From: Macrostomum lignano
Taxonomy: Eukaryota
DNA length: 64,000 nucleotides
Reading direction: 5' to 3'
NCBI GenBank assembly: GCA_002269645.1
Contig: NIVC01001708.1
Location: forward strand, 62,001-126,000
Below, piece by piece: positions 17,846-63,714 of the stretch. Position numbers and translations under genes: made by a program. The notes beneath the pieces are model-generated. The model searched no databases and was not told the origin of the DNA. It saw only the letters and a program-made list of their open reading frames with translations. How positions within the stretch are numbered: the first letter of the stretch is position 1; the number at the start of each line of letters is the position of its first letter.

Positions 17846-17876
<31 letters not shown>

Positions 17877-40431: not shown

Positions 40432-41162
40432 GATGCTGAGGCCTCCTGGCTGCATACGCACGCCGCAAGCCAGCAGTCGGTGCCAGAAGTGCACCGGCAC
40501 CGCTAGCTCGTGCGCAAACAGAGGAGGATCAGTCTGCAATGAGCCGCACTTTACTGGTCCGCGTCAGAGACTTGTAGAATTTGATCCGTTTCACAGCTCT
40601 CTGCCTCCATTTCAGCAGCTGTCCCAGATGCGCGTGTTTCATCGTCATACACCTGAATCAGGGTTCGGCGACCCCCGGCTCTCGAAGCCTCTATATCCGG
40701 ACCTTGGGTGATTTAAAACTCTTTTAATAGAAATGATTAATTAATTACAATAACTGCTTATCCTTCAAATCATTCAAAGAGAATGTTTCCGCTGACATTC
40801 TCTTATTCGGCGATTCTGTAACCATCTCACCCCAAGGTCGCTTTGCCAGGCTGGCCAAGCTGTCTGTCTGAAAATCTGAAACTGCTCCAGATGTTGCTTT
40901 TATTTTCTTGTTTCCCTGCCCCCGCCCCAGTTTCTGTGCTGTGGATTGCCGGCAGAGAGGGCTCGGGCTCAAAGAAATTTCCATCTCAGACTCAAGCCCA
41001 CAACGTCTGCCTGGAGAATCGATAGTTTGACCATGTTTCTGATGGGGTATCGAACGAATTTTCAATGCAGTTTTGTCACTCTTTAGATTAAAAAACACTT
41101 CACACTAAACATTTTTTACATTTTCGAGCTTGTGAAGTTTCGAAATTGCGAAGTTTCGAGTA

Positions 41163-43686: not shown

Positions 43687-44279
43687 GGGGGCAGTGGGAG
43701 GCGAGTGATGGAGGGTTAGGAAGGGACGTAAATTCTGTTTGGAGACGCGATCCAAAAGGACATTAAGAAAACCCAGAGAACCTCTGCAATATCGGATGAT
43801 TGAATTGAAAGCAATAAGCTCAAAAACAATTTATTTTGCTGTGCGCTGTTTCCAATGCAGAGGCGGTCATTTTCTTGGATCGATGGTCAGCTATATAAAC
43901 AACAGAAATATGAGCATTCATGTAGTATATTTTCATTAAGATGTTGCAGAGAATCTGTCCAAACTGTAGCGCAATATCCTTTTTTATGAGAATCGTTCTA
44001 AATATCTACTTCGGATGATATCGTTTAACAACTGATGCCGTTCATCATTTCTGTCATTAGGAAAAATGGGATTTTTTCACTGCCAAAGCGGCTGTCATTT
44101 CAAGCGGGAGGATAGCAATAAAATAACAATGACTGCCACAAGAAATCAACATAGATAGGGGTGCTGGGAGAGTGAGAATGAGATGTGGGTGCAAATGTGC
44201 GTGTGCTACATGGTGATGACTCAATCAGTCACGTTCATAGTTCACAGAGTTCTTCTATTAAATCATCTTGGCTGCTCAA

Positions 44280-45422
44280 TCAGTTTAATGAAGGCAGCAG
44301 CCGCTGTTGAGTCTCCTGCAGCTCGAACGTCGCTGCCGTCGGCTGCTGCTGCCGCTGCTGCTTCCCCTGCGTCCGGTCGGCGGCCGGTCGCGGATTCCCG
44401 ACGCTCCGACAGGCCGGCAGGCGGTTTAGCAGGGCCTTCAGATCGGTCATGAACAGCGACGAGGTAAAGCTAAAGATGAAGAAGTGGATGAGGTGATTCA
44501 GCCGCTCCAGAATCTGGCAGATCAGCTCGATGCGGCTGCACATGAGCGAGTCCATGTCGCACAGATCCGAGAAGCCGTGGTACCAGACCACGACGGGCGC
44601 CGTGAACAGCAGATGGCAGACAGCCATGGCGAACACGGTCACGAAGATCTTGTTCGAAGCCTGGCGACCGCCGCCGCCGCCGTTGCCGCCTCCCGCGCCG
44701 CGGCCGCCGCTGCGAGAGGCCGCGGCAGCCAGTCTCTGCCGCTGACGACCCAGACGGACCAAAATGACGGCGTTGAGAGAGACGATGAGAGCGAAAGGCA
44801 GGTAGGAGTACACGATGGAGTCGACTATGTTGAACGCTTGTCTGAGAGTCTCGAACTCGGCGCGCTCACTGCAGGTCTCCGGCTCGACAATGAACAGCAG
44901 CGGCAGGTCGCAGGTGGCCAGCAGGCTGGCGACCACAGCCAGGGCGGCGGCACCGTTGCGCAGCTGGCAGACGGACTTCATGCTGAACGGCCAGCAGACG
45001 CAGACGAGGCGCTCGACGCACATCAGGCAGATGATCCACACGGACGTGTTGCTGAGCCAGGTGTACAGGAACAGCGGCCAGCTGCAGCCTAGCAACATCC
45101 GGGGATCGCGGCAGGTGACAGTAATGGCCAGGTGTCTCAGGCAGCCCTGCGCCAGCACGAGGGTGTCTACGGCGCACAGCACAGTCAGGAACAGCGCCGT
45201 GGAGCCCTGCGAGCTGCTGATCCGGCGGCACCAGAGCAGCATGGAGAGCAGGTCGGCCGGCACGCCAACCAGCAGGAACACGATGGAGTAGAACAGCAGG
45301 AGGTAGCGGACCAGCGGGTCCTGGCCCGCCATCTGGCCACCGTTGTCAAAGTAGCTGTTGCTGTCATTCGGCAGGCTGCAGTTGGGCAACCCGAACAGCA
45401 GGGAGGATGCCGGCGTCTCCAT
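44280..45422 (-). CDS. Intronless rhodopsin-class (peptide-receptor-like) GPCR, ~380 aa
   Basis: Seven hydrophobic segments; N-terminal NCS/NDS glycosylation sites; LCAVD (TM2), VERLVCVCWPF (TM3), YLPF (TM5), LNHLIHFFIF (TM7). ATG at 45422 within ORF 44280..45551. Confidence 0.88.
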   Translation of the reverse strand: METPASSLLFGLPNCSLPNDSNSYFDNGGQMAGQDPLVRYLLLFYSIVFLLVGVPADLLSMLLWCRRISSSQGSTALFLTVLCAVDTLVLAQGCLRHLAITVTCRDPRMLLGCSWPLFLYTWLSNTSVWIICLMCVERLVCVCWPFSMKSVCQLRNGAAALAVVASLLATCDLPLLFIVEPETCSERAEFETLRQAFNIVDSIVYSYLPFALIVSLNAVILVRLGRQRQRLAAAASRSGGRGAGGGNGGGGGRQASNKIFVTVFAMAVCHLLFTAPVVVWYHGFSDLCDMDSLMCSRIELICQILERLNHLIHFFIFSFTSSLFMTDLKALLNRLPACRSVGNPRPAADRTQGKQQRQQQPTAATFELQETQQRLLPSLN

Positions 45423-45789
45423 GGCTCTGCGTGTCTCAGCTCTGCAATTTCTGCTTTTGCTGTTCTGTCTGTGCTTGAAATCGGCTTGCCAATCCAATTT
45501 CTGCTGCAGAATAAGTAGCAACTGCTGCGTCCGCCCCTGATTGGTTCGCACGGCCAGCCATCCACCGCCATTAGGGATTAGAGTTAGGGCAGGAGTTTCC
45601 GGCTTTTTGGAAGCCCAAACTCCATTTTTTCCACCCGATTCTCTGCAGCCAGCTTCCTACAGCCCTCCGTAGTCATCCGTCATCATTTGATTTGCCAGAA
45701 AATGGCAGCGAAGATTTCTGGGAATTTCTCAAAATCTACTTTATTCATCCACTTCATTTGGCCCCATTCAGCCGAGAGTACCTTCCCAA

Positions 45790-46974: not shown

Positions 46975-47370
46975 GGACTGGGATTGTGACAATCTGCACT
47001 AAAAGACTGGGATAGTGGCATTCTGCACTAAAATACTGGGATAGTGGCATTCTGCACTAAAAGACTGGGATAGTGACATTCTGCACTAAAAGACTGGGAT
47101 AGTGGCATTCTGCACTAAAATACTGGGATAGTGACAATCTGCACTAAAAAGACTGGGATAGTGGCATTCTGCACTAAAAGACTGGGATAGTGGCATTCTG
47201 CACTAAAAGACTGGGATAGTGGCATTCTGCACTAAAAGACTGGGATAGTGGCATTCTGCACTAAAAGACTGGGATAGTGACATTCTGCACTAAAAGACTG
47301 GGATAGTGGCATTCTGCACTAAAAGACTGGGATAGTGACATTCTGCACTAAAAAGACTGGGATAGTGGCA
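46975..47370. repeat. ~29-30-bp minisatellite (ctgcactaaaagactgggatagtggcatt), array 1
   Basis: About 13 units. Confidence 0.96.
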
Positions 47371-48086
47371 CACACGGACGGATTCAAGAGGCACTAATTT
47401 TATCTTTTCTGTATGAACCAAACCAATATAGCTATACTGATGAATTAAAATTGTTCAATACAATGAACTCCCAAATAGTTGCTAATCCAACTGCCGGCTG
47501 ATTGAAGTGGAGTTAATGCGGTGCAGCACTCTAAACCTGGTTCTGCGCCACTAAACTGTGTGCGTGACGCCCTCGCATTTCCGAGAAAGGATCCATTTTA
47601 AATTCATGCATTAAAACAAATCAATTTAATCTTGCTCTACACTTCCATAATTGATTTAATCTGCCAAATAATTCCACCGAATGTACTTGCGATACTTTAC
47701 CCAATAATTTGCGCATATAGGCCCAACACCGGCCCCCCGTAACTTGGCATGGCAGTTGCTGTAGTTTAAAATTAGAAATAGTATAGAAAATGCAAGCATA
47801 ATTAGCAGATGCAACTGAAATTTATGGTTCTGGAATCGATATACTCGTATGTCACCGAGGCCCCACTTGTGGGCCAATTACGAGTTAGAATCGCTAATGA
47901 TTTAAGGCCGGACAGAATCCACTTTTGCTGCGGCACCACGGTTCTCGCTTGCGGTCTGCGCTGCCACCTTGTGATTGAGCTATCATCATCATCCCCACCA
48001 TCATCATCATCATCATCATCATCATCACCATCATCATCACCATCATCATCATCATCATCACCATCACCATCATCATCATCACCACC
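47371..48086. repeat. Left copy of a long direct repeat flanking the RTE-like LINE
   Basis: Matches 51028-51740 (offset 3657), including the interruption pattern of the (CAT)n. Confidence 0.93.
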
Positions 48087-50695
48087 TTCTTCTTCTTCTG
48101 TCCTTTTATCGCCGGGGGGGGGCGTGGACACGGGCACGTTTATTGAGAGGTGCAGGTACGTCTGTGTCTGGCCATGTTGGTCTTGGCCAGGAGTCTGCCG
48201 CAGCTGGGGCACGGTGCTCTCGTGCTGCGGTAGATCCTCGCGCCCAGTTCTTCCACTCTCGCCGGTTGCTCTGGCAGGTGGGCCTGGACTCTCGTTGGTC
48301 CGCAGGTTTTGCGGTGCCGCGCGAAATTCGACTTGCTCCGCCAGCTCCCGCATTGGGCGCACAGGACGAGGCCTCCAGCTTGCTTTTCTCCCTGGCATCG
48401 TTTCTGGTGGTTTTTCCTGGTTGCTTCTGAGGTGAACGTGGTCAAGCAAATTGGGCATGGTAGCTGCACTCTTTCGAAGATGTGGTGCATGCGCCTCTGG
48501 TGGATCGCCAGTCCTCCTCTTGACGCGCAGGTCTTAGTACACCCCTCGTAGCGGCAGCGGTAACCCGTTAGCTCGGATTCGCCCTGCCCGTCCTCTTCTG
48601 GCGGGGTCTCACTTGCCTCTGGTTGTCGCTTTTTTCTTTTGGCCTTCTCCTCCCGGTCCAGTTCTCTTTCGCGTTTCTTTATTCGTTCTTTCCATGCAGT
48701 CCGGTCCGCCACCATCCTCTCGAGGTCTAGCTCGTCGATCTTCGCCCCGCGGAGCATCTTCTTCCAATATGAGACGATCGTCTGCTTCCGTTTCTTGGCT
48801 TTTCGGATGCCCTCCAAGGTCTTATTCCAGCCTAGAATGCACGTCTTAGCTAGGTTCGAGTCGGGTAGGCAGAGCACGTGGCCCATACGCCTCCAGTGCG
48901 CTGCTTCAATTTTGTTGCTGATACTCTTGATGCCGAGTTCTGCGCGCACGTCCCACATATTGACTCCCTTCTCTTCCATTTCTATGAGCGGTGGTCTTGT
49001 CTTCGCGCTCCAGACGTATCTGTACTTTCTGTCCATTGTTTGCTGCATTCTCTTGACCTCGGATTTCTGGAAGGGTCTCGCTCCGGCGTTAAACAGCATG
49101 GTGCTTTCCACGCAGGCTTCGACAATGCGCGCTTGAGTGCGCTTGCTCAGCCGTGTGCGCCGGAGCATGTTCTTTGTTCCGTGCCATGCTTTGGCTGCTC
49201 GTTTCAGTCTTTGCGTCATATCCTGCTTCCTTCCCAGCCAGGTCCCGAGCATCCGGATGTTTCCGCTATCCTCGGTGCCTAGCGTAGCTCTTTCTTCTTT
49301 ATCGTCGTTTGTCCTTTCTTCAAGGTCTGCCATGGTCTCGATGATGACCCTCGTTCCCTGGTTGACCTCGGCTGCGGTCCCGATGACGGTGGTGTCGTCG
49401 GCGAACAATGAGCTCGTGATCTTGATTTCGACCGTCTCGTCGTTGCGGACACCAATTCTTTGCGGAGGTAGGCAGCTGCCTGGTCGGCGGACCCAGCGAA
49501 TCCCGTGCACTTGTCCTGTTTCCTTCGCCAGAGTGGCTCGTCTCTCTTCAGCTAACCTCATGACTGCCTGGTGGAAGATATTAAAGAGTATTGGCGATGT
49601 GGCGCATCCTTCGCGGAGTCCCCGTTGCGGGTAAAACTCCGTGCTCCACTCATTATCACAAAGCACCTTGTACGCGGTAAATTCATGTAGGTCTTTAATC
49701 TTGTCAATCATCTTTTTCGGCATCCTGTAGTGCTCGAGGAGTTCCCACAGTAGTGGCTTGTTGACTCTCGGGTACGCTTTTCGGAGGTCAAGCAGGACGA
49801 TGTTGGTGTCCGTTTCTGGGTCGTAATCCGGGCTCTCGCGGATTTTTTCGGCGTCCTCGTTCAAACGGAGGATGATTTGGGTCGCATCCATGGTGGATCG
49901 TCCTCGCCGGAAGCCAGCTTGATTTTCATCCATCAGTCCCAGCTTCTCCGCCCAGACGCTGAGTCTCGAGGCAATGATGCGTGCGATTATTCGGCTAAGG
50001 CATGGGAGGAGGCAGACGCCGCGGAAATTATTCAGATTTGCTCTGTCTCCCTTTTTGTGAAGTGGTATGATGATCCCCACTTTTTGATCGTTTTCCCATG
50101 TAGATGCTGGATGTTTCCAGAGTCGCTGGATTTCCTGCTTTAGGACTACTTTTGCTTCGTCGCAGGCGTTCCTGATGTACCGTATTCTAAGATCGTCGAC
50201 TCCTGGTGCTCCATCTTTGATTTTAGCAAGCTCCGTCTCTATCTCAGTGTCTTTCAGTTCACTGGCGAGATCCGCGTTTGCAATTTCAATCTCATTTACC
50301 GGTCTGCTCGTAGGGGGCATCCGGTGGACTAGGTGGAGCATTTCTTCTGGGTTGTTCTCGAAACGTTGGTCTTGGATTTTCGAGAGGTGGTTTTTAAACT
50401 CCTCCGCTGAGAAAAGCGGGAGGATCTTGCTGTTATTGCTGTTCTGTGTGTCGCTTTTACCCATTCTCCTCAGGCAGTCATACATCCCTCCGGTGTTTCC
50501 ACTGTCACAATGCCTTTTGCATTCTTCCGCGATTTCGGTCCACCAGCTCTCTTCCCATTCACGGAGCCTGTTTTTTTGTTGTTTTCTGATGGTTTTTAGG
50601 CGCTCTTCTGCCATTTGTACCCTGCTTACTCGCTCTGGTGTTTCTTGCTCGCGGAGCTGTCGTCGTGCGTTGTTCCTCTGTGCTAAGGCATCTTT
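48087..50695 (-). mobile_element. 5'-truncated RTE-like non-LTR retrotransposon (young)
   Basis: Intact RT ORF; short 3' UTR ending in (GAA)4; 5' end fused to the minisatellite. Confidence 0.92.
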
Positions 50696-50704
50696 TAGTG
50701 ACAT
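48140..50704 (-). CDS. LINE reverse transcriptase with four C-terminal zinc fingers (no APE domain)
   Basis: GAPGVD, QAGFRRGRST, DLRKAY, GLREGCATSPILFN, LFADD; C2H2/C2HC fingers at the C-terminus; 854 aa, uninterrupted. Confidence 0.92.
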   Translation of the reverse strand: MSLKDALAQRNNARRQLREQETPERVSRVQMAEERLKTIRKQQKNRLREWEESWWTEIAEECKRHCDSGNTGGMYDCLRRMGKSDTQNSNNSKILPLFSAEEFKNHLSKIQDQRFENNPEEMLHLVHRMPPTSRPVNEIEIANADLASELKDTEIETELAKIKDGAPGVDDLRIRYIRNACDEAKVVLKQEIQRLWKHPASTWENDQKVGIIIPLHKKGDRANLNNFRGVCLLPCLSRIIARIIASRLSVWAEKLGLMDENQAGFRRGRSTMDATQIILRLNEDAEKIRESPDYDPETDTNIVLLDLRKAYPRVNKPLLWELLEHYRMPKKMIDKIKDLHEFTAYKVLCDNEWSTEFYPQRGLREGCATSPILFNIFHQAVMRLAEERRATLAKETGQVHGIRWVRRPGSCLPPQRIGVRNDETVEIKITSSLFADDTTVIGTAAEVNQGTRVIIETMADLEERTNDDKEERATLGTEDSGNIRMLGTWLGRKQDMTQRLKRAAKAWHGTKNMLRRTRLSKRTQARIVEACVESTMLFNAGARPFQKSEVKRMQQTMDRKYRYVWSAKTRPPLIEMEEKGVNMWDVRAELGIKSISNKIEAAHWRRMGHVLCLPDSNLAKTCILGWNKTLEGIRKAKKRKQTIVSYWKKMLRGAKIDELDLERMVADRTAWKERIKKRERELDREEKAKRKKRQPEASETPPEEDGQGESELTGYRCRYEGCTKTCASRGGLAIHQRRMHHIFERVQLPCPICLTTFTSEATRKNHQKRCQGEKQAGGLVLCAQCGSWRSKSNFARHRKTCGPTRVQAHLPEQPARVEELGARIYRSTRAPCPSCGRLLAKTNMARHRRTCTSQ

Positions 50705-51027
50705 TCTGCACTAAAAGACTGGGATAGTGGCATTCTGCACTAAAAGACTGGGATAGTGGCATTCTGCACTAAAAAGACTGGGATAGTGACATTCTGCACT
50801 AAAAGACTGGGATAGTGGCATTCTGCACTAAAAAGACTGGGATAGTGACATTCTGCACTAAAAGACTGGGATAGTGGCATTCTGCACTAAAAAGACTGGG
50901 ATAGTGGCATTCTGCACTAAAAAGACTGGGATAGTGGCATTCTGCACTAAAAGACTGGGATAGTGGCATTCTGCACTAAAAGACTGGGATAGTGACATTC
51001 TGCACTAAAAAGACTGGGATAGTGGCA
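50696..51027. repeat. ~29-30-bp minisatellite, array 2
   Basis: Same unit as 46975-47370; about 11 units. Confidence 0.96.
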
Positions 51028-51734
51028 CACACGGACGGATTCAAGAGGCACTAATTTTATCTTTTCTGTATGAACCAAACCAATATAGCTATACTGATGA
51101 ATTAAAATTGTTCAATACAATGAACTCCCAAATAGTTGCTAATCCAACTGCCGGCTGATTGAAGTGGAGTTAATGCGGTGCAGCACTCTAAACCTGGTTC
51201 TGCGCCACTAAACTGTGTGCGTGACGCCCTCGCATTTCCGAGAAAGGATCCATTTTAAATTCATGCATTAAAACAAATCAATTTAATCTTGCTCTACACT
51301 TCCATAATTGATTTAATCTGCCAAATAATTCCACCGAATGTACTTGCGATACTTTACCCAATAATTTGCGCATATAGGCCCAACACCGGCCCCCCGTAAC
51401 TTGGCATGGCAGTTGCTGTAGTTTAAAATTAGAAATAGTATAGAAAATGCAAGCATAATTAGCAGATGCAACTGAAATTTATGGTTCTGGAATCGATATA
51501 CTCGTATGTCACCGAGGCCCCACTTGTGGGCCAATTACGAGTTAGAATCGCTAATGATTTAAGGCCGGACAGAATCCACTTTTGCTGCGGCACCACGGTT
51601 CTCGCTTGCGGTCTGCGCTGCCACCTTGTGATTGAGCTATCATCATCATCCCCACCATCATCATCATCATCATCATCATCACCATCATCATCACCATCAT
51701 CATCATCATCATCACCATCACCATCATCATCATC

Positions 51735-51740
<6 letters not shown>
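51028..51740. repeat. Right copy of the long direct repeat
   Basis: ORFs 47656..47877 and 51313..51534 translate identically. Confidence 0.93.
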
Positions 51741-51768
<28 letters not shown>

Positions 51769-51806
51769 TCACCATCATCATCACCATCATCATCATCATC
51801 ATCACC

Positions 51807-51838
<32 letters not shown>

Positions 51839-52110
51839 CATCACCATCATCATCATCACCATCATCATCACCGTCATCATCATCATCACCATCCTCATCA
51901 TCACCATCATCACCATCATCATCACCATCATCATAATCACCATCACCATCATCATCATCATCATCATCACCACCATCATCATCATCATCACCATCACCAT
52001 CATCATCATCATCATCATCATAATCATCATCATCATCATCACCATCACCATCATCATCATCATCATCATAATCACAATCATCATCATAATCACCATCATC
52101 ATCATCATCA
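51640..52110. repeat. (CAT)n/(CAC)n microsatellite
   Basis: Visible tandem repeat. Confidence 0.97.
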
Positions 52111-53170
52111 GCATCGTCTTGTTTCTTCCTTTATCGCCGACGCTTCGGATTGGACAGGTCAGTCTCGTTCGCACACTCTTCTATGTATCGCCATATTTGT
52201 TTTTGCTAATAGTCGTCCGCAAATCGGGCATTTTCCTTTCTCGCTGCGGTACACTCTCGCGACTGCCATGATGTGGACTTGCTTGACGGGACTGCCAGGC
52301 TGGCATGCCTTTGCGTGTCTGGCGAAATTTGACCTGCTCTGCCATCGTCCACAGCTTGTGCATTGTACCCTCCCGCTCTCGCTACGTCCGCCTCTGCACC
52401 ACTTTGCGCGGTTCTTGCGTGTGGCTTCTGAGTTGAACGTCGCGTTGCATCCGTTAAATTTGAGTGTTACCTTTGCCTCCCTGTGATGAATCATTCTCTG
52501 ATGTATTGCCAGTCCTCCTCGTGATGCACAGATCTTGTTGCACCCTTCGTATCGACATCGGTAGCCGGTTAGTTCTGTTTCTCTGTCTTCTTCTCTTTCT
52601 GCCTGTGCCCGGGTCCGCGTCTTGGTACCCTCTCGTGCACCCCTTCTCTTCTTCTTGTTTCGCTTGGTCCTCGCGTTGTTTTACAGGTGCTTGCCAGAGC
52701 TCCCTGTCTGTTACCGTTCTTTTGATATCAGTCTCCTTGAGGCCTGCTCTTTTAACTATTTTCTTCCAGAAGGACACGATTGTCTGGTTTCGTAGTCTCG
52801 CCTTCCTCACTCCTTCCAGGTTCTTACTCCATCTCGTGATGCAGATTTTAGCTAGGCTGGTGCCTGGGTTGTTTGATACATGACCCATCCGTCTCCAGTG
52901 CGCTTTTTCTGCTTTCCATTCGATGCTGTCTATGTGGAGTTCTTTTCATACATCCCACATGTTAACGCCTTTTCCTCCATTCGATCAGGGGTGATTTAGT
53001 CTTGCTGCTCCATATGTATCTGCACCTCCTGCCCATTGCCTTCTGCATCTTTTTTAGTTCAGATTTGTAGAACGGGCGGGCTCCCACGTTGAAAAAGAGC
53101 GTACTTTCTACACACACACACGCTTCCAAAATCTTCGCTTGGGTGCGCCGGTGGAGTTTTGTTCTTCGCA

Positions 53171-54436
53171 GTATTTCAAAAGTTCGTAGAAAAGCAGTCT
53201 TTGCATAAAGCTATAGCCTTGAAACTTTTCACAAATACTATTTCATATATCCAAAGCCTACAGCTAAATTTTCAGCAAAATTAATTGAAATGGCCACCAG
53301 AAATCTGCAATAAAACTCTGAACTCCCCACTGCGTTTACTGCGTTCTCCAGAAATGAAGCTGCTGCTGAGATGAAGACTGTACTGCAAGATGAAGCTCCA
53401 TCCCTCAGCACTGTGCACAAGTGGTTTGGTCGCTTTAGAGCCGGCCATTTCAATCTGGCTGACAAGCCAAGAGAAGGTCGTCCAAGAACATCAACAGATT
53501 CCTTAAATGTGGCTGCTGTGCAGTCGGCGTTGAACGAGAATGCAAGACTGACGATTGAGAGGATGGAGGAGAGTTTGGGCATTGATGCCACATCGATTTG
53601 GAGGATCTTGCACGAAGATCTTGGTGTCACCAAGAAAGCTGCCAAATGGGTGCCACGAATCCTCTCGCCTGAGCAGAAGCAGCAGAGAATTGATTTCTGC
53701 AGAAATTTCCTGGATCAGTTCAAAGATGGAGCATCTGCGAATTTCCAGAACATCGTCACAGGTGATGAAGCCTGGTTCCATCAGTACGACCCGCCAACTA
53801 AATCACAGTCGATGGTTTGGTCACTGAAAGGAGCCCCACCTCCCCAAAAGGCGGAGCGGGTGAGGTCAGCTGGGAAAATCATGTTCGCGATTTTCTTCTC
53901 GCCCAGAGGCATCGTAGCCTCAGTGCCTGTTGAGCAAGGCCGCACTGTGACCTCTGATTGGTACGTGACCAGCTGCTTGCCCGCTGTGTTCAATTCCATC
54001 GCAGCTGGCCGCGGCAAAGCTGAGCTACGCCGCTACTTCCTGCATCACGACAACGCACCTGCACACACAGCGAACAACACAGTGCAGCACATTCATGCTT
54101 CTGGCATCAAGCTGCTGAGCGCTCCGCCTTATTCACCGGATCTGGCGCCGTGCGATTTCTGGTTATTTTCGAAAATCAAGCAGCCGCTGCGTGGAAAGTT
54201 GTTTGAGACTCGAGATGAGCTGATTTCTGCTGTGAATGAGCAGCTCAACTCCATTGAAAAAGCTGATTTTAGGGGTTGCTTTGATAGCTGGCTGCAGCGC
54301 ATGCGAACGTGCATAGAAATTGGTGGCGATTACGTTGAGAGATCAGATTGAGATGCTGATTAATGTGTCGCAACCCGCTTTTTGATATCTGCTTGCTTTC
54401 TATCACTTTCTACGAACTTTTGAAATACCCCTCGTA
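53171..54436 (+). mobile_element. mariner DNA transposon
   Basis: TIR gtatttcaaaagttcgtagaaa at left (outer bases deleted) and tttctacgaacttttgaaatacccctcgta at right. Confidence 0.93.
53371..54351 (+). CDS. mariner transposase (D,D34D), N-terminus damaged
   Basis: WVPRIL, IVTGDEAW, HDNAPAH, YSPDLAPCD with 34 residues between the last two Asp; in-frame stop upstream of 53371. Confidence 0.93.
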   Translation: MKTVLQDEAPSLSTVHKWFGRFRAGHFNLADKPREGRPRTSTDSLNVAAVQSALNENARLTIERMEESLGIDATSIWRILHEDLGVTKKAAKWVPRILSPEQKQQRIDFCRNFLDQFKDGASANFQNIVTGDEAWFHQYDPPTKSQSMVWSLKGAPPPQKAERVRSAGKIMFAIFFSPRGIVASVPVEQGRTVTSDWYVTSCLPAVFNSIAAGRGKAELRRYFLHHDNAPAHTANNTVQHIHASGIKLLSAPPYSPDLAPCDFWLFSKIKQPLRGKLFETRDELISAVNEQLNSIEKADFRGCFDSWLQRMRTCIEIGGDYVERSD

Positions 54437-56347
54437 TTCTTTAAACTCCGTTTCAAGCTTGAGCTGCTCTCTTCATTCTCTGTGTTATACGCTGGTATCC
54501 TCTGTACTCCCAAGCCACGTTCCTAGCATCCTGATTTTGTCGTCTTTTTTGTCCTGAGGGTTGCCTTCTCTTCTTTGTCTGTATTTGTTCTCTTCTCTTG
54601 TTCGCCCATCGTTATCTCGATTGTGTCTGTTCCTGATGCTATTTCTTCCGACATGCCTATCAAAGTCATATCGTCCGCGAAATGTGAGTTCGATATGATG
54701 GTGTGTTGGTCGTTTCCTCGTTGTACTCGTATCGTTCTGTTCTTTTGGGCGGTAGCGCGTGTCCTGGCCTATGGACCCACTTCACTCCGTACTGCTTTCC
54801 TTCCTCTCTTGCTTTTTTCGCCCTTTTTCTTCTGCCAGTCGCATGACTGCCTGATGGAATATATTGAAGAGGATAGGTGACGTCGCGCATCCTTCTCTGA
54901 GCCCCCGTTGGGGGTAGAACTCCGTGCTGGTTTCCTTGTCGCATCGCACCTTGTTCGTGCAAGTCCTTGCTGAGAATATTGTTGAGAATGCTCTCTTCTA
55001 GGTATCTCCAAAGCACTGGTTTGTTCACTCTCTGGTAGGCTTTTCTTAGATCCAATAGCGTAATTGCTGTAATCATTCTTCCACTGAAATCTGGGCTGCC
55101 TCATTTTCTTTGAGTCTCAGGATTACTTGGGTGGCGTCTAGGGTGGATCGTCCGCTCCTGAAGCCTGCTTGTGTATCTTTGAGGCGTTCTGTCCATTTGC
55201 TCAGTCTGGTTGCTAGGATTCGCTAGGTTGCTAGGACTCTGCTTACCATCGACAGGAGGCACACTCCCCTGAAATTGTTCATGTTAGCTCTGTCGCTCTT
55301 CTTGTGTAGCGGTACAATGATTCCTGTCTTGTCGCTTGATCTCCACCCGTCTCCGGTTGCTGGAGTCTTCGACAAGCGGTGAATTTTCATCTTCAGGTGC
55401 GTGTTGACTTCTGTACACGCGTCTCTGATATAGCGCATTCTGACGCCATCCTCTCCAGGTGCTCCGTCCTTTATTTTGGCTATCGCTATATCAATTTCAT
55501 CACCGGTTAGTTCCTATGTCAGATCCTTGGTCGCTTCTTCCCTTGTTTGTTCGTCGAGCTCCGGTTTCTGGATCTGTTTGAGTAGTGCATACATTGTGTC
55601 TGGGTCATTTTTGAATCTAACGGCTTGGATGGCTTCCAGGTGATCCCTGAAAACTTCCGCCGAGAACAGTGGTACGGACTTGCTGTTGTTACTGTTAGGT
55701 TGGCAGTTTTTCCCAATTTTCCTCTGACATTCATACATTCCGCCTACGTCCGCAATGTTCTGCCACCATTCCTCTTCCCATCTCTGTATTGCTTCTTTGT
55801 GCTTTTCTCTGCACTCTTTGAGTTGTTCTTTTGTCTGTTCCCTCTCCTCTTCTTGTCTTGCCGTTGCCTCAGGTGTATTGTTCATTCCTGATTCCTTCGT
55901 GCTGTTGCGCCTGGCCAGGGCCTTTGCGATTTCCTTGTTTAAACTCAAGTTCTTTCTCGTGTCCGATCATCCACTCATTCGTTTTGTCTTTTCTTCGTCC
56001 CGCATATCGTCTCTGATTTTCCGGTCCTATCTTTTCATGTTTTCTTCTGTTAGAGTCCTGAAACCTTCTTTGGTTTCTGAGTCGCGTAGGCGTTCCCATA
56101 CGATTTGCTTTTCTTGTGTTTTTGGGTTTCTTCTGGGTATCGCCCTGTGGCGCTCGCAGAAATTCCTGTGTAATGTCACAACTTTCGCTGTAAGGTGGTC
56201 GGATAGGTTTTGCTCACTGTTGGTAAATCACCATGACCATCAATTTGTCAATTTTAATAGCTAGAAGTCTGTTATCCGGTCGTTTTCGCGCCATACCGTT
56301 CACGCGGTGTTGTTCAGCAATATCCCTACTTTGTAGGAGTAGACTAC

Positions 56348-57636: not shown

Positions 57637-57904
57637 TTGGCCAGGCCGAGGAACGACCGGACTTCCTTGGCAGACTGTGGATCCTTGAATGCTTGCAGCT
57701 CCGCGATTTTCTCTTCTGATGGCTGGATGCCGAACTTGGAGAGCGTCATAGCCATGAACTTGGCCTTGCCGATGCCCCAGTGGCACTTGCTGGTATTCAG
57801 GGTGATGCCATTGTCACGCAGTCTGGTCAGGCAGGCTGCCACGTGTTCTTGGTGAACTTCAGGGCCCTGACTGGATGATGATGTCGTCGTGGATCCACTT
57901 AACA
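57637..57904. repeat. 268-bp target-site duplication, left copy
   Basis: Identical by eye to 61512-61779; ORFs 57637..57855 and 61512..61730 translate identically. Confidence 0.95.
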
Positions 57905-60900
57905 GCTTGCATCTTTGCGAGCAAAACGCTCAGTGCGTGGCTCAGATCGGACCTGTCCAACAGGGACATCTGCGTCATCCAATCCGAGGACCTTCTTCCT
58001 GGGAAGACCACCCTCATTGCCTCGGTTTACCTACCAGGCGATGCTGCGGTCGTCCCCAGAGCCCTCGCTACGCTGGTAGAGCTCTGCTCTGCCAAAAACT
58101 ACGAGCTCATGGTTGCCGGCGACATCAACGCCCACCACACTCACTGGGGCAGCACTGGCATTAATCAGAGAGGCGAAGACCTCCTAGCCTACGTTGCCTC
58201 TACGACCCTCGAGTTCTGCAACTCTGGGTCCACCCCTACCTTTGACAACGGACGGTGGTCGGAGGTGATCGACGCTACGCTCGCAACGCCCAGACTCTAC
58301 CAGAGTATTGGAGCGTGGCGGGTGCTTCCAGTGTCCTCACTCTCGGATCACAAGTTCATCTCCTTCAACCTAATGGCCGCGCGTAGCGCAACTCGTGTTA
58401 CGTGGAGACGGAACGCCAGAAATACGGATTGGGAAACCTTCGGGCTCGCCCTGAAGGAATTCCATCGGTCTCCTGGCCAACCATCCACGATCACGTCGTG
58501 CCGAGAGGCGGATGAGTGCGCGACTGTTTTGACAGAGACGCTAACCGCCGCCTTTGAGGCGTCCTGCCCTTTAAAAGCCTATAAAGGGAAAAAATCGGCG
58601 CCGTGGTGGAATCCCGAGCTCGGCAACCTCCGTCGCAGGGCTAAGAGACTCCACCGCAGAGCAACTAAAACTAAGAGCCCTGCAGACCAAACCGCCTATC
58701 ATGAAGCAATTCATGAGTTTAAAAGGAAGGTTAGGAATGCAAAGGCTCAAAAATGGCGACAATACTGTGAGGAGCTAGAGGGCTCACGCCCCACCTCCAG
58801 AGTTGTGAAAGCGCTCACGCTGGACAAAATGTCTAAGCTCTCCTCGGTCAAACGCACCGACGGTACGTCCATGGACAACCCAGGGGAAACGCTTGATGTA
58901 ATGCTCACTGCGTTTTTCCCCAACGAGCCAGCTAACCAGACCACTCCGGATCACTCGGAGGGAGGTCACGCGCTGGCTGCCTCTATCATCACGGAGGACC
59001 GCATTGTGAGAGCGGCAAATTCCTTCAAGCCTTTCAAAGCCCCAGGACCCGACGGCATTGTACCGGCCCTTCTAAGAGAGGCGGTTAAATGCCCAGGCTT
59101 CCTGCGCAAACTTTGCAGCCTTCTTCGGGCATGCATCACGCTTGGTTATGTCCCACAGGCTTGGACCGAGGCAAAGGTGATCTTTATCCCTAAGCCAGGC
59201 CGCTCGGACTACCATTCTATCAAATCCTTCAGACCGATCAGCTTGACCTCCTCCCTGGTCAAGCTGATGGAGAGACTGGTGCTTTGGCGCCTTCTCTCTG
59301 TTGAGCTGAAGAACAAACCTCTCAGCGAGAACCAGCACGCTTTTCGGGCGGGTCGCTCCACTGAAAGCGCGCTGCACGTCCTGGTCGATAAACTCGAGAA
59401 GGCCGTGCTTGGTAATGGCTTTGCTCTGGGGATCTTCCTGGATATCATTGGCGCCTTCGATAACGTCCTCTTTGAGGCGTTCCGAAGAGCTCTTTGTGAG
59501 AGGCAAACGCACTCACATCTCACCAGATGGATCATGTACATGATCAGCCATCGCACGGCCACCGCCAGTCTGCTGGGCTACCAGAGGACGGTCCCCGTCT
59601 GCAAAGGTAGCCCGCAAGGTGGGGTGCTGTCTCCAGTTCTCTGGAATATGGTCATCGATGAGCTCCTCCGGGATGTTCGGCCAGACCCCATTCTGAAAGT
59701 TGGATATGCGGACGATGTCACCGCGGTGGCATCTGGTCCGTCCCCTGATACCCTCAGGGACCTTCTTCAGAACTTCATCTACGCTGCTGAGCAATGGGCG
59801 GACCGCTGTGGTTTAAGGCTCTCTGAGACTAAGACCGCAGCGATCATGTTCACCAGCAGGACCAAGTGGCAGATTCGGCCGCTCACGCTTTACGGAAGGG
59901 AAATCCCCTTCTGCAAGCAGACTAAATGTCTGGGTATTACCCTGGACCACAGGCTGAACTGGTCACCCCACGTTCAAACAAAAGCCAAAAAGGCCTTCGC
60001 AGTCCTCGCGCAATTGCGCAGGGCTGTCGGCACCACCTGGGGGCTCACCCCCAAGCGCCTCTGGTGGATCTACACTGCAATGGTTAGGCCCGCTATCTCG
60101 TATGGCGGCCTGATCTGGGCTAGCGCCCTGCAGATAAAGACCTGTCTAGAGGCTCTCAGGAGAGCGCAAGGGCGCGCTTGTCGCACGATCATGAGCGCCC
60201 CTCCGTCTGCTCCCTACGATGGCCTCAACGCCTTCCTCAACATTCCTCCGCTGGACATCTTTGTCCGCAGGGAAGCGGCTAAGACTGCCCGCCGTCTAGC
60301 TGACGCTGGCATTCGAATCCAGCCCCATAGGGCCATGGCTAAGCGCAAGCTTCTGCCCCACGCTGACCTCTGCCTCAAGGACTTGAGAGACAGCGGCGGG
60401 CTCCACGTCCTATCTGACGGCGAACCCCGCACTCTCAACCTCTTTCAGCGCTACAAGGTCACCATCCCCTCTAGGGATGCTGCCAATGACCACTGGAATT
60501 TCCAGGAGGTCCATTGCTACACGGACGGATCCATCAAAGACGGTCGCGCCGGCTTTGGGGTCTGCATCATCATCAACGGCCGCGTAATTGCCACGCATGC
60601 CCAGCACACTGGTAGACTCTCCACAGTCTTCCAGAACGAAGTCCTTGCCATCAGCTCTTGCGCTGCAGAGCTGAACGCCAAGGTTACGAGAGGAAAGACT
60701 ATTGTCATCCACTCTGACAGCCAAGCGGCCTTACAGGCCCTTTGCCACACCACAACGAACTCCCGGACAGTCGCCGACTGCGCCCGGCAGCTCAACCTCC
60801 TGGCCAGAAGCAATACTGTCAGGCTGAAGTGGATCCCAGGGCACGCAGGGTTTCCGGGGAACGAGCTGGCAGACACCCTCGCCAAGAGGGGCGGCTCTGG

Positions 60901-61399
60901 CTCTTTCTTCGGCCCTGCCCCCCTGGTCCCTATGCCCTTGACAGTCATCAATCGTCAGATCGACGACTGGGCTGACTCCCTCCACAGGGACAGATGGGCG
61001 GGCACCCAAAACTGCCGGCAATCTCGTGCCGCGGTTCCTTGCCCGTCTCACAGGCTCAGAAACATCCTTCTGAACCAGAATCGGAAGGATATTCGAGCCC
61101 TTGTCATGACCCTTACCGGCCATGGCTACCTCGCCAGGCACTGCTTCCTCCGAGGCGACCTCGAGAGCGAAATTTGCCCCTTTTGCGAGTGCGACAAAGA
61201 AGATGCTCAGCACTTTGTCTGTCACTGCCCTTTCTTTAACAGAGACCGGCTACGCTACCTCGGGCCGAACCCGTCCATTGACGAGGTCTGCCAGCCCGAC
61301 AGCATCCCACGGCTCATCCAGTTCCTTCGGGCGACTAGACGAGCCAGTTTCTTCCCAACGGAAGATCACGCTGCAGGACGGACCGGCGGACCACCCTGA
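57875..61399 (+). CDS. LINE ORF2: partial APE, reverse transcriptase, RNase H, zinc knuckle
   Basis: GDINAHH/SDH, KAPGPDG, QGGVLSP, YADD, WGLTPKRLWWIYTAMVRP, YTDGS...WIPGH...GNELAD, CPFC..H..C; 1174 aa, uninterrupted. Confidence 0.95.
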   Translation: MMMSSWIHLTACIFASKTLSAWLRSDLSNRDICVIQSEDLLPGKTTLIASVYLPGDAAVVPRALATLVELCSAKNYELMVAGDINAHHTHWGSTGINQRGEDLLAYVASTTLEFCNSGSTPTFDNGRWSEVIDATLATPRLYQSIGAWRVLPVSSLSDHKFISFNLMAARSATRVTWRRNARNTDWETFGLALKEFHRSPGQPSTITSCREADECATVLTETLTAAFEASCPLKAYKGKKSAPWWNPELGNLRRRAKRLHRRATKTKSPADQTAYHEAIHEFKRKVRNAKAQKWRQYCEELEGSRPTSRVVKALTLDKMSKLSSVKRTDGTSMDNPGETLDVMLTAFFPNEPANQTTPDHSEGGHALAASIITEDRIVRAANSFKPFKAPGPDGIVPALLREAVKCPGFLRKLCSLLRACITLGYVPQAWTEAKVIFIPKPGRSDYHSIKSFRPISLTSSLVKLMERLVLWRLLSVELKNKPLSENQHAFRAGRSTESALHVLVDKLEKAVLGNGFALGIFLDIIGAFDNVLFEAFRRALCERQTHSHLTRWIMYMISHRTATASLLGYQRTVPVCKGSPQGGVLSPVLWNMVIDELLRDVRPDPILKVGYADDVTAVASGPSPDTLRDLLQNFIYAAEQWADRCGLRLSETKTAAIMFTSRTKWQIRPLTLYGREIPFCKQTKCLGITLDHRLNWSPHVQTKAKKAFAVLAQLRRAVGTTWGLTPKRLWWIYTAMVRPAISYGGLIWASALQIKTCLEALRRAQGRACRTIMSAPPSAPYDGLNAFLNIPPLDIFVRREAAKTARRLADAGIRIQPHRAMAKRKLLPHADLCLKDLRDSGGLHVLSDGEPRTLNLFQRYKVTIPSRDAANDHWNFQEVHCYTDGSIKDGRAGFGVCIIINGRVIATHAQHTGRLSTVFQNEVLAISSCAAELNAKVTRGKTIVIHSDSQAALQALCHTTTNSRTVADCARQLNLLARSNTVRLKWIPGHAGFPGNELADTLAKRGGSGSFFGPAPLVPMPLTVINRQIDDWADSLHRDRWAGTQNCRQSRAAVPCPSHRLRNILLNQNRKDIRALVMTLTGHGYLARHCFLRGDLESEICPFCECDKEDAQHFVCHCPFFNRDRLRYLGPNPSIDEVCQPDSIPRLIQFLRATRRASFFPTEDHAAGRTGGPP

Positions 61400-61511
61400 C
61401 CGGCCCCACGCCTCTGCCTGTCTGCGGGCCTTCAGGGGCTAGCGGAATGGGCGACCCTCGCCTCCCCGCTGTGTCTACGGACCACCCTGCAGCTAAGTCA
61501 AGTAAGTCAAG
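57905..61511 (+). mobile_element. 5'-truncated LOA/Lian-like LINE inserted in the Gypsy RT
   Basis: Partial APE, RT, RNase H and CCHC; 3' tail (TAAGTCAAG)2; flanked by 268-bp direct repeats. Confidence 0.93.
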
Positions 61512-61779
61512 TTGGCCAGGCCGAGGAACGACCGGACTTCCTTGGCAGACTGTGGATCCTTGAATGCTTGCAGCTCCGCGATTTTCTCTTCTGATGGCTG
61601 GATGCCGAACTTGGAGAGCGTCATAGCCATGAACTTGGCCTTGCCGATGCCCCAGTGGCACTTGCTGGTATTCAGGGTGATGCCATTGTCACGCAGTCTG
61701 GTCAGGCAGGCTGCCACGTGTTCTTGGTGAACTTCAGGGCCCTGACTGGATGATGATGTCGTCGTGGATCCACTTAACA
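61512..61779. repeat. 268-bp target-site duplication, right copy
   Basis: Begins right after the LINE tail and ends at the same ccacttaaca as the left copy. Confidence 0.95.
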
Positions 61780-63125: not shown

Positions 63126-63560
63126 TTTTGGTGGTGGTATCTTCTGATTCCATTTGACACGTTGTTCAGTTCAGTGAATAATGTAGCGTTCCAGTGCGAA
63201 CTTAACCATTTGTCCGAAACGTCCGGCTCCGATGTTCGCTCTTTGGGCATTCCATGTCTCAATTTTTACTTTCTCCTCTTGCCATTTCCTTCTTGCTGTT
63301 ATAAGTCTCGTTTTTGTTCTTGCTTTTCGTTTTTCATTGCCTTTCCTCTTCCTTCTTTCTGATCTGGCTTTCTTCTGGGTTTCGCTCCTTGGTCCGGGGT
63401 TCTTTTCTTCAGGCAGCTTCAGGTTGATGGCGTTTTTATTGCTCTTTTTCTCTCTTTTTTGGTTTTTTTATGGCTCTTCTTTCCTCTTTTAATCCTCACT
63501 GACATCTTTCACCATATTTTGTTTTTAGAGGTGCACAAGTTGGTTACTTCCTGTCTTGGA
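63126..63560 (-). mobile_element. 5' part of the old RTE-like LINE (APE N-terminus)
   Basis: Minus translation KVKIETWNAQRANIG resembles the APE TWN motif; same strand as 52111-56347. Confidence 0.6.
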
Positions 63561-63608: not shown

Positions 63609-63630
63609 ATCATCATCATCATCATCATTT

Positions 63631-63661
<31 letters not shown>

Positions 63662-63682
63662 CATCACCATCACCATCATCAC

Positions 63683-63714
<32 letters not shown>

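What the first reader, a model, noticed from the sequence alone, without database searches (positions are those of the whole stretch)
46975..51740. RTE-like LINE flanked by a ~0.7-1.05 kb direct repeat with TSD geometry
Seen: the order is minisatellite-unique A-(CAT)n, then the LINE on the minus strand, then minisatellite-unique A-(CAT)n. 47371-48086 matches 51028-51740, down to the CAT/CAC interruption pattern (one unit of slippage). The left copy stops exactly at the LINE (GAA)4 tail. The right copy starts exactly at the LINE 5' break, with 'tagtg' microhomology. Up to ~330 bp of minisatellite may also belong to the repeat, but unit order differs between the arrays. Inference: a kilobase-scale TSD, longer than those I recall for RTE elements.
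Basis: partly seen in the sequence, partly recalled or inferred. Interest (0 to 1): 0.8.

Follow-up and report, generated by a model that had tools for sequence, protein, structure and literature searches.

The report
LINE insertion with kilobase target duplication
A young, 5'-truncated LINE retrotransposon in what appears to be the flatworm Macrostomum lignano is flanked by a 1,045-bp duplication of its target, a rare but already documented outcome of LINE integration. A second LINE 7 kb away carries a 268-bp one.

Summary
47042-48086 and 50696-51740 match at 98.7% over 1,049 columns. The 611-bp unique core has no substitutions and the (CAT)n part differs by one unit. The repeat ends lie within 1 bp of the LINE's (GAA)4 tail and within 3 bp of where LINE protein homology begins.

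New context:
- **Clade.** The LINE is not demonstrably RTE. Its family has a 2A-like motif, APE, RT and C-terminal C2H2 fingers, without RNase H.
- **Target.** The family inserts into (ATG)n arrays. The right-hand (CAT)n is the tail of an older copy of the same family (52116-56224). The 3' junction is therefore typical and only the 5' junction is displaced by 1 kb.
- **Relatives.** Six related insertions in other genomes show no long duplication.
- **Second case.** An unrelated LINE at 57905-61511 is flanked by a perfect 268-bp repeat. Removing it plus one repeat copy restores a colinear Gypsy pol.
- **Precedents.** A 1,228-bp TSD of ZfL2-2 in DT40 cells, about 900-bp duplications with Dualen in Chlamydomonas, and L1-bridged tandem duplications in tumours.

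Verdict: this is most likely a real, single-event, insertion-coupled duplication, that is, a long TSD. No empty allele was available and the nicks are inferred. It is a new member of a known kind, of moderate interest.

The parts
46976..47370 (.). Left minisatellite array (29/30-bp units, 13.6 copies). The part from about 47042 (register ambiguous, possibly about 46985) to 47370 belongs to the left copy of the duplication.
   Evidence: TRF; unit listing; BLAST register
47042..48086 (.). Left copy of the 1,045-bp duplication. It abuts the LINE1 3' tail and consists of minisatellite units, unique A (47371-47981) and (CAT)n (47982-48086).
   Evidence: 98.7% overall; 611/611 in A; one CAT unit of slippage
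48087..50695 (-). LINE1, a young 5'-truncated non-LTR retrotransposon lacking the APE domain. Tail A(GAA)4G at 48087-48100, a 53-nt 3' UTR including the tail, ORF 48140-50704 (854 aa, uninterrupted). The ORF's first codons (ATG at 50704-50702, then up to two more) lie in the flanking minisatellite.
   Evidence: RVT_1 1.6e-21, C2H2; aligns to P0001 residues 344-1193; all family-invariant residues kept
50696..51740 (.). Right copy of the duplication. It abuts the LINE1 5' break and consists of minisatellite (50696-51027, 11.3 units), unique A (51028-51638) and (CAT)n (51639-51740).
51741..52115 (-). Remainder of the (CAT)n array, which is (ATG)n on the LINE strand. Together with 51639-51740 it forms the microsatellite that follows the 3' end of LINE2. 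This is the array into which LINE1 integrated.
   Evidence: family 3' ends are always followed by (ATG)n
52116..56224 (-). LINE2, an older degenerate copy of the same family (about 35-60% aa identity to LINE1). It is interrupted by a mariner-like element with an ORF at 53371-54351 (+). Its 3' end CGGCGATAAAGGAAGAAACAAGAC resembles that of LINE1.
   Evidence: D7; profile match, HMM 272-1235; mariner domains
57637..57904 (.). Left copy of a perfect 268-bp TSD flanking LINE3. It is supporting evidence and not part of the original finding.
   Evidence: 268/268 identical; flanks diverge immediately outside
57905..61511 (+). LINE3, an unrelated young 5'-truncated LINE with half an APE domain, RT and RNase H. 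ORF 57875-61399 (1174 aa); tail CAGCTAAGTCAAGTAAGTCAAG. It is inserted in a Gypsy-like pol gene.
   Evidence: a relative, L029, has the same 3' end
61512..61779 (.). Right copy of the 268-bp TSD of LINE3.
   Evidence: the reconstructed empty site gives one colinear RVT_1 domain and the downstream pol

Best explanation
A single retrotransposition event inserted LINE1 and duplicated 1,045 bp of target DNA, giving a very long target-site duplication. LINE1 belongs to a family that integrates into (ATG)n microsatellites.

Proposed steps:
1. The first nick fell in the (ATG)n tail of the older LINE2, at 51740/51741.
2. The window + strand end ...CATCACCAC-3' primed reverse transcription at the element's (GAA)4 tail.
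3. cDNA synthesis stopped about 1.1-1.4 kb short of the element's 5' end.
4. Normally the other strand is used a few bases away, inside the microsatellite. Here the cDNA was joined to a break or free 3' end 1,045 bp downstream, inside a 29-bp minisatellite.
5. Fill-in of the two single-stranded stretches copied the interval (CAT)n, A and minisatellite onto both sides of the element.

Shown directly: the geometry, the coincidence of the boundaries with the element ends, the identity of the copies, the family's (ATG)n targeting, and a second long TSD in the same window. Inferred: the two nicks, their order, and what produced the distant second break. It could have been the element's endonuclease, a pre-existing nick, or a replication intermediate.
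For: - **Boundaries.** The repeat boundaries coincide with the LINE ends, within 1 bp at the tail and within 3 bp at the start of protein homology.
- **Youth.** There are 0 substitutions in 611 bp of unique sequence, one 3-bp slip in (CAT)n and an uninterrupted 854-aa ORF that keeps every family-invariant residue. Both the insertion and the duplication are therefore young.
- **Logic of the junctions.** The two junctions of one LINE copy lie 1 kb apart on the target. A short-TSD insertion plus a single crossover cannot give this.
- **3' junction is typical.** Eight of 8 family 3' ends examined are followed by (ATG)n (window LINE1 and LINE2; L001 x2, L002 x2 counting the upstream copy, L003, L004 x2, L005).
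- **Independent second case.** LINE3 has a 268/268 perfect flanking repeat, and the reconstructed single-copy site restores a colinear Gypsy RT/pol. These two pairs are the only non-tandem direct repeats of at least 40 bp and at least 95% identity within 12 kb in the whole window.
- **Precedent.** ZfL2-2 in DT40 cells gave 1 of 25 insertions with a 1,228-bp TSD (PMC2666801). Dualen-4b in Chlamydomonas gave flanking duplications with a median of 900 bp (PMC9977147).
Against: - No empty allele, orthologous locus or read-level support could be obtained. The window's LINE1 protein is not in the 15-billion-protein collection, and the unique A sequence is absent from JGI metagenome contigs.
- The minisatellite part of the two copies differs (about 6 substitutions and 5 A-run indels in about 330 bp), whereas a fresh TSD should be identical. 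This needs a secondary explanation: repeat turnover, slippage during fill-in, or consensus error.
- Six related insertions in other genomes, with both flanks visible, show no long duplication. A long TSD is therefore not a demonstrated habit of the family.
- The microhomology at the 5' junction is unverifiable.
Confidence: 0.77

Rival explanations
1. Chimeric cDNA with no long stagger. The reverse transcriptase copied LINE1 RNA to the truncation point. It then switched template to a local transcript running through (ATG)n, A and the minisatellite on the LINE strand. The composite cDNA integrated with both junctions inside the (ATG)n array, as is usual for this family. The extra copy would then be RNA-derived.
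For: - In 6 relatives the family normally has both junctions in (ATG)n, and this model preserves that.
- A GPCR ORF on the same strand lies downstream at 44280-45551, so transcripts through the region in this orientation are plausible.
- Template slippage by RT could explain the altered minisatellite.
- Template switching by LINE reverse transcriptases is established for L1/U6 chimeras (PMC6789731, listed).
Against: - It requires the second template to come from exactly the locus being targeted.
- It does not explain the LINE3 case without assuming an antisense Gypsy transcript from exactly that site as well. A DNA-level TSD explains both cases uniformly.
- No transcript evidence is available.
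Confidence: 0.08
2. The tandem duplication [minisatellite-A-(CAT)n] x2 existed first, and LINE1, which targets (ATG)n, later landed at its junction.
For: The family's preference for (ATG)n makes a hit in the 105-bp left (CAT)n array unsurprising.
Against: - The LINE would have to sit exactly on the duplication junction, leaving no (CAT) unit on its 5' side and no short TSD. That is roughly 1 in 35 positions, or needs an exactly matching target deletion.
- Two rare, very recent events would be needed at one site, given 0/611 divergence, against one event in the main model.
- For LINE3 the analogous explanation is excluded, because a Gypsy pol gene does not carry an internal 89-aa duplication.
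Confidence: 0.06
3. Assembly artefact in a repeat-rich, recently duplicated genome. It could arise from a chimeric join, or from merging two haplotypes or homeologues through the LINE body.
For: - The window is dense in minisatellites and nested TEs.
- The source appears to be Macrostomum lignano, whose genome is, from my own knowledge, highly repetitive with hidden polyploidy.
- The A4/A5 run differences in the minisatellite look like long-read consensus noise.
Against: - Simple concatenation of haplotypes cannot create the LINE-interior/minisatellite junction at 50695/50696.
- Merging two independent insertions would need a second LINE1 of identical sequence and orientation inserted in the minisatellite, against the family's (ATG)n specificity.
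- The same kind of artefact would have had to occur a second time at LINE3, with base-perfect boundaries.
Confidence: 0.06

Closest known systems
Long TSD of the zebrafish L2-clade LINE ZfL2-2 in chicken DT40 cells (Suzuki et al. 2009, PMC2666801)
   Same: An APE-type LINE with a microsatellite-type tail. One insertion carried a 1,228-bp target-site duplication, the same size class and geometry as here.
   Different: It was an experimental, somatic-cell event with a marked element, at 1 of 25 wild-type insertions. The case here is a natural germline insertion from a different clade in a flatworm, and 2 of 2 young LINEs in the window show it.
Dualen-4b_cRei insertions in Chlamydomonas mutation-accumulation lines (Lopez-Cortegano et al. 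2023, PMC9977147)
   Same: De novo LINE insertions flanked by duplications with a median of 900 bp, interpreted as exceptionally long TSDs.
   Different: Dualen carries both RLE and APE endonucleases, and the authors suggested that this dual action explains the long TSDs. LINE1's family and LINE3 show only an APE-type endonuclease, so that explanation would not apply.
L1-bridged tandem duplications in tumours (PCAWG retrotransposition study, bioRxiv 10.1101/179705)
   Same: A single LINE insertion sits at the junction of a direct duplication, with the endonuclease motif at the 3' junction. The proposed mechanism pairs the cDNA with a distant break or with the sister chromatid.
   Different: The scale is megabases and the setting is somatic cancer, and the events are described as aberrant. 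Here the scale is 0.27-1.05 kb and the insertions are germline.
R9 elements of bdelloid rotifers (126-bp TSD; Gladyshev and Arkhipova 2009, as cited in PMC9977147)
   Same: A LINE with a TSD much longer than the usual 7-20 bp.
   Different: R9 is an RLE-type, rDNA-specific element whose 126-bp TSD has a fixed length. Here the lengths vary (268 and 1,045 bp) and the elements are APE-type.
RTE clade (RTE-1, SR2, SR3, BovB)
   Same: A very short 3' UTR ending in tri- to pentamer repeats. Target choice correlates with the 3' microsatellite (PMC6007223, PMC1291365).
   Different: RTE ORFs are 922-1,066 aa with APE and RT only, and their TSDs are mostly 7-15 bp. This family has ORFs of about 1,200-1,350 aa with a 2A-like motif and C2H2 fingers. 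Clade membership was not tested by phylogeny.
Microsatellite-specific LINEs (Dong, Kibi, Koshi, Waldo, Mino; Kojima and Fujiwara 2004, cited in PMC4494074; the element names and their targets are from my own knowledge)
   Same: Integration is confined to one microsatellite motif, which produces head-to-tail arrays.
   Different: Those families belong to the R4, Tx1 and R1 groups and target (TAA)n, (TC)n, (TTC)n, (ACAY)n and (AC)n. I know of no described (ATG)n-specific family with this domain set, but I could not search Repbase.

Membership tests
Target-site duplication of a LINE (TPRT) | Direct repeats abut both ends of the element with no intervening sequence | tested here: met
   The left copy ends at 48086 and the tail starts at 48087. 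The right copy starts at 50696 and LINE protein homology starts at 50698.
Target-site duplication of a LINE (TPRT) | The two copies are identical at the time of insertion | tested here: inconclusive
   715 of 716 bp-equivalents are identical outside the minisatellite (0 substitutions, one CAT slip). The roughly 330-bp minisatellite part differs by about 11 small changes.
Target-site duplication of a LINE (TPRT) | The sequence is single-copy at the empty (pre-insertion) site | not testable with these tools
   No allele or orthologue was found. For the neighbouring LINE3 the feature is met in silico: one copy restores a colinear Gypsy pol with a single RVT_1 domain.
Target-site duplication of a LINE (TPRT) | The 3' junction lies at the element's own tail and at its usual target | tested here: met
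   (GAA)4 is followed by (ATG)n, as in all 8 family 3' ends examined.
RTE clade | The RT domain groups with RTE-1/BovB in a phylogeny | not tested
   No labelled reference sequences were obtainable.
RTE clade | A single ORF of about 900-1,070 aa containing only APE and RT (PMC1291365) | tested here: not met
   Full-length relatives are about 1,200-1,350 aa with an N-terminal NPGP motif and C-terminal C2H2 fingers (11 of 12 members). LINE1 itself has the fingers.
RTE clade | A very short 3' UTR ending in short simple repeats | tested here: met
   53 nt lie between the stop codon (48140-48142) and the end of the (GAA)4 tail. Relatives end in (GAA)n, (GATGC)4, (GATAC)4 or (AAGAC)3.
Ingi/Vingi-like LINEs | Single ORF with an N-terminal 2A-like motif, APE, RT and C-terminal C2H2 fingers (L1Tc: PMC2805920, PMC3708506) | tested here: met
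   The consensus of 12 family members has ..NPGP.. upstream of the APE domain. Pfam finds APE, RVT_1 and zf-C2H2. LINE1 is truncated and lacks the N-terminal part.
Ingi/Vingi-like LINEs | RNase H domain after RT (Ingi proper); absent in Vingi | tested here: not met
   No RNase H hit in 12 of 12 members at E<=0.1. The architecture therefore resembles Vingi rather than Ingi. Phylogeny was not tested.
Microsatellite-specific LINEs | Insertions occur consistently inside one microsatellite motif, on both sides of the element | tested here: met
   (ATG)n follows all 8 3' ends. It also precedes the 5' ends of the elements in L001, L002, L003 and L004 (x2). LINE1 is the exception at its 5' side.

The most novel reading that the evidence does not exclude
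In Macrostomum lignano, LINE integration may commonly produce target duplications of hundreds to a thousand base pairs whatever the LINE clade. Both young LINEs in this 64-kb window do so (268 bp and 1,045 bp). That would point to a host-side peculiarity of the second half of target-primed reverse transcription. Examples would be no coordinated second-strand cleavage, or use of distant nicks or replication intermediates. It would argue against a property of one element, and against the idea that long TSDs need two endonucleases as proposed for Dualen.
Probability: 0.3. Interest if true: 0.65.

Novelty: new member of a known kind. Interest (0 to 1): 0.45.

Why it matters
How the second strand is cut and synthesised is the least understood part of LINE integration. 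The TSD length is the direct footprint of where the second strand was broken.

Kilobase TSDs have been seen once in a cell-culture assay, as a habit of Dualen in an alga, and as aberrant events in tumours. A natural germline case in an animal, with a second one 7 kb away from an unrelated LINE, suggests that M. lignano might be a genome where this outcome is frequent. If so, it can be studied by a simple genome-wide survey.

Such events also duplicate kilobase stretches of host sequence in one step. Here the duplicated stretch lies upstream of a GPCR gene. The work also defines an (ATG)n-targeting LINE family that builds head-to-tail arrays.

Tried and rejected
- **Same allele or empty allele.** The exact-sequence look-up of the LINE1 ORF found no record. 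A 42-mer of unique A found nothing in JGI metagenome contigs.
- **Labelled RT reference sequences.** The supplement of PMC3708506 is not held and the Vingi paper PMC3002237 is not held. No phylogeny was run.
- **Survey of relatives.** JGI loci (L005-L028) are element-length contigs without flanks. They were useful only for defining 3' ends. The closest LINE3 relative with a contig (L029) lacks flanks.
- **A plus minisatellite as part of the LINE or of another repeat: rejected.** A occurs only twice in the window and not in any related locus. The two flanking LINEs share only about 50% aa identity while A is 100% identical. There is no Rfam or tRNA hit in A.
- **Tandem duplication of a whole [LINE + flank] unit: rejected.** LINE1 and LINE2 are different subfamilies.
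- **LINE1 and LINE2 truncated at the same point: rejected.** LINE2 reaches HMM position 272 and LINE1 starts at 384.
- **Long TSD for LINE2: none found.** Its 5' flank does not match its 3' flank.
- **Better register for the two minisatellite arrays.** A register with a 2-unit gap is no better than the BLAST register (and notebook).

Full report
**1. The observation**

A 29/30-bp minisatellite (46976-47370, 13.6 units) is followed by 611 bp of unique sequence 'A' (47371-47981), a (CAT)n run (47982-48086) and a LINE on the minus strand (48087-50695). The same minisatellite (50696-51027, 11.3 units), A (51028-51638) and (CAT)n then follow again.
- BLAST of the region against the window aligns 47042-48086 with 50696-51740 at 98.665% over 1,049 columns.
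- A global alignment shows no difference in the 611 bp of A and one CAT unit of slippage (47999-48001). The two copies diverge from 48087/51741.
- 48087-48100 is CTTCTTCTTCTTCT, which is the element's A(GAA)4G tail.
- On the other side the repeat starts at 50696, and similarity to full-length relatives starts at 50698 (P0001 residue 344; profile position 384 of 1238).
- Both repeat boundaries therefore coincide with the element's ends to within 1-3 bp. A occurs nowhere else in the window or in any related locus.
- The 'tagtg' microhomology cannot be checked, because no full-length copy of this subfamily is available.

**2. What the LINE is**

- The ORF 48140-50704(-) is 854 aa and uninterrupted. 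It contains RVT_1 (E 1.6e-21) and C-terminal C2H2-type fingers.
- Its first codons (ATG at 50704-50702, then up to two more) lie in the minisatellite and are fortuitous.
- The best homologues are only 45% identical. They are typically about 1,200-1,350 aa with APE, RT and C2H2.
- A 12-member alignment shows a conserved N-terminal ..NPGP.. (2A-like) motif just before the APE domain. All invariant residues are retained in LINE1. None of the 12 has an RNase H hit.
- RTE elements are described as 3.2-3.9 kb, with 922-1,066-aa ORFs carrying APE and RT only, and a very short 3' UTR ending in simple repeats (PMC1291365). Only the last feature fits: LINE1 has 53 nt from stop codon to tail end.
- The 2A + APE + RT + C2H2 layout is that of L1Tc/Ingi (PMC2805920, PMC3708506). 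Without RNase H it resembles Vingi.
- I could not obtain labelled reference sequences, so the clade is untested. 'RTE-like' is not supported by architecture.

**3. The (CAT)n is not an incidental host microsatellite**

- Directly right of the right-hand (CAT)n array, which runs to 52115, lies the 3' end of a second, degenerate LINE of the same family on the same strand. This is LINE2, 52116 to about 56224. It is interrupted by a mariner-like element (ORF 53371-54351).
- Its end, CGGCGATAAAGGAAGAAACAAGAC, matches LINE1's CGGCGATAAAAGGACAGAAGAAGAAGAAG.
- Relatives were fetched from two ENA long-read assemblies and from JGI contigs. Every 3' end has the form GGCGAYAAAAG, then a short repeat of its own, then (ATG)n. 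The own repeats are (GAA)n, (GATGC)4, (GATAC)4 or (AAGAC)3.
- The 5' ends also abut (ATG)n. This gives head-to-tail arrays (L002, L004) and insertions into the tails of earlier copies or of a SINE-like partner (L001, L003).
- The family is therefore (ATG)n-targeting. LINE1's 3' junction, inside LINE2's tail, is exactly what is expected.
- The abnormal feature is the 5' junction. It should lie in the same microsatellite but lies 1,045 bp further on, in the minisatellite.
- None of the six related insertions with both flanks visible has a long flanking repeat.

**4. Which histories can give this structure**

- One LINE copy has its tail joined to target position y and its 5' end joined to target position x, where x = y - 1,045. 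A normal short-TSD insertion followed by any single exchange cannot do this.
- The remaining options are:
  - (a) one insertion event that duplicated the interval, which is a long TSD in the broad sense;
  - (b) a pre-existing tandem duplication hit exactly at its junction;
  - (c) a chimeric cDNA (LINE1 plus a local transcript) integrated normally;
  - (d) misassembly.
- Option (b) needs two rare recent events and an exact landing, roughly 1 in 35 positions of the 105-bp array, with no short TSD.
- Option (d) cannot arise from haplotype concatenation. It would otherwise need a second identical LINE1 inserted in the minisatellite, against the family's specificity.
- Option (c) is mechanistically possible and keeps both junctions in (ATG)n. 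It requires the second template to come from the very locus being targeted.

**5. An independent second case**

- A scan of the whole window looked for non-tandem direct repeats of at least 40 bp and at least 95% identity within 12 kb. It returns exactly two pairs: the one above, and 57637-57904 = 61512-61779, which is 268/268 identical.
- The second pair flanks LINE3 (57905-61511, + strand). LINE3 is an unrelated, 5'-truncated LINE with half an APE domain, RT and RNase H and an intact 1,174-aa ORF. Its 3' end is confirmed by a relative (L029).
- The host sequence there is a Gypsy-like pol gene on the minus strand. Deleting LINE3 plus one repeat copy gives a colinear ..FTKLDIFKAFHQ..GVKWIHDDIII..EVHQEHVAACL..RSFLGLAN|HLEKFMPHL.. 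This has a single RVT_1 match (model positions 1-193) running across the junction.
- A retroviral-type pol does not carry an internal 89-aa duplication. The site was therefore single-copy before insertion, and this is a genuine 268-bp TSD.
- This removes the pre-existing-duplication explanation for LINE3 and makes the artefact and RNA-switch explanations less attractive as general accounts. It shows that long TSDs do occur in this genome.

**6. Source organism**

- LINE3's ORF is 99% identical, over 45% of its length, to a UniRef protein of Macrostomum lignano. Several other M. lignano entries match at 56-79%. The window is very likely from that flatworm or a very close relative.
- The window also holds a rhodopsin-type GPCR ORF (44280-45551, minus strand) about 1.4 kb from the left minisatellite, and an amino-acid permease exon.

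**7. What is known**

- RTE TSDs are mostly 7-15 bp and L1 TSDs 7-18 bp (PMC6007223).
- Long TSDs are documented:
  - 126 bp for R9;
  - a median of 900 bp for Dualen-4b in Chlamydomonas mutation-accumulation lines, there tentatively ascribed to Dualen's two endonucleases (PMC9977147);
  - one 1,228-bp TSD among 25 ZfL2-2 insertions in wild-type DT40 cells (PMC2666801);
  - L1 insertions bridging tandem duplications in tumours (bioRxiv 10.1101/179705).
- The present case is therefore a natural, germline, animal example of a known rare outcome, in an APE-type element.
- If the ZfL2-2 rate (about 4%) applied here, finding that the second young LINE in the window also has a long TSD would be unexpected. 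This hints at a higher rate in this genome, but n = 2.

**8. Unexplained detail**

- The minisatellite parts differ by about 6 substitutions at known variant positions and five A4/A5 run differences in about 330 bp. The other 716 bp have no substitution, which is not uniform point mutation (p about 0.001).
- Repeat turnover after insertion, slippage during fill-in synthesis, or (for the A runs) consensus error are all possible. The exact left end of the duplicated segment within the left array is therefore ambiguous (47042, or near 46985).

**9. Verdict**

- The kilobase-TSD interpretation is the best-supported explanation (about 0.77) but is not proven for want of an empty allele.
- The RTE label is not supported.
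- This is a new member of a known kind, of moderate interest. The interest would rise if a genome-wide survey shows that long TSDs are the rule in M. lignano.

Noticed in passing
window 57637-61779: A second, unrelated young LINE (LINE3, 57905-61511 +, APE-RT-RNase H, intact 1,174-aa ORF) is flanked by a perfect 268-bp direct repeat (57637-57904 = 61512-61779). The reconstructed empty site restores a colinear Gypsy-like pol, so this is a true 268-bp TSD.
   Followed up: yes
window 48087-50695 and 52116-56224; L001, L002, L003, L004, L005: The LINE family (2A-like motif, APE, RT, C2H2 fingers) always ends in GGCGAYAAAAG, then a short repeat of its own, then (ATG)n. Its 5' ends also abut (ATG)n. 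It appears to be an (ATG)n-specific LINE that builds head-to-tail arrays. Examples are two full-length copies 4,041-4,059 bp apart in L004 and nested copies in L002.
   Followed up: partly
L001:5240-5560 and L003:5750-5900: A short, non-coding, SINE-like element is shared by two different assemblies. It ends with a LINE-like 3' end (..GGGGCGAAAAGGGAAGAC.. / ..GGGGAGCAAAATGGGAAAC..) followed by (ATG)n. It is probably a non-autonomous partner of the LINE family, and full LINE copies have inserted into its tail.
   Followed up: no
window 63221-63407 (-) and 63609-63767: A fragment matching the family's N-terminus (profile positions 11-62, E 1.9e-8) lies next to another (CAT)n array. LINE2 (52116-56224) and this fragment may be one old full-length copy, split by the Gypsy-like element (about 56.7-63 kb) that LINE3 later entered. 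That would be three levels of nesting.
   Followed up: partly
window 53371-54351 (+): An intact 326-aa mariner/Tc1-type transposase ORF (HTH_48, HTH_32, DDE_3, Transposase_1) lies inside LINE2.
   Followed up: no
window 44280-45551 (-): A single-exon rhodopsin-family GPCR ORF (7tm_1, E 1.8e-13) lies on the same strand as LINE1, about 1.4 kb from the left minisatellite. The LINE1 event duplicated about 1 kb of its upstream region and pushed the older sequence 3.65 kb further away.
   Followed up: no
window 1-5400 versus 7315-13825, and 5393-7095 versus 15984-18030: Large direct segmental repeats (90-96% identity, about 7.3 kb and 10.6 kb apart) contain their own minisatellites and (GATA)n arrays. 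They are older than, and unrelated to, the LINE-flanking repeats.
   Followed up: no
window 41163-43689, 19512-21563, 39426-40433 and others: Minisatellite density is exceptional, with at least 20 arrays. One has 56 copies of a 45-bp unit at 98% identity, and another is a 2-kb array of a 14-bp unit. These create many long spurious ORFs on both strands.
   Followed up: no
window 46978-47356 versus 50696-51013: Unit-variant order differs between the two minisatellite copies, although the rest of the duplication is identical. Five right-hand units have A5 where their left partners have A4.
   Followed up: partly
window 34161-34232 (-): A tRNA-Val (CAC) gene is found by both ARAGORN and Rfam.
   Followed up: no
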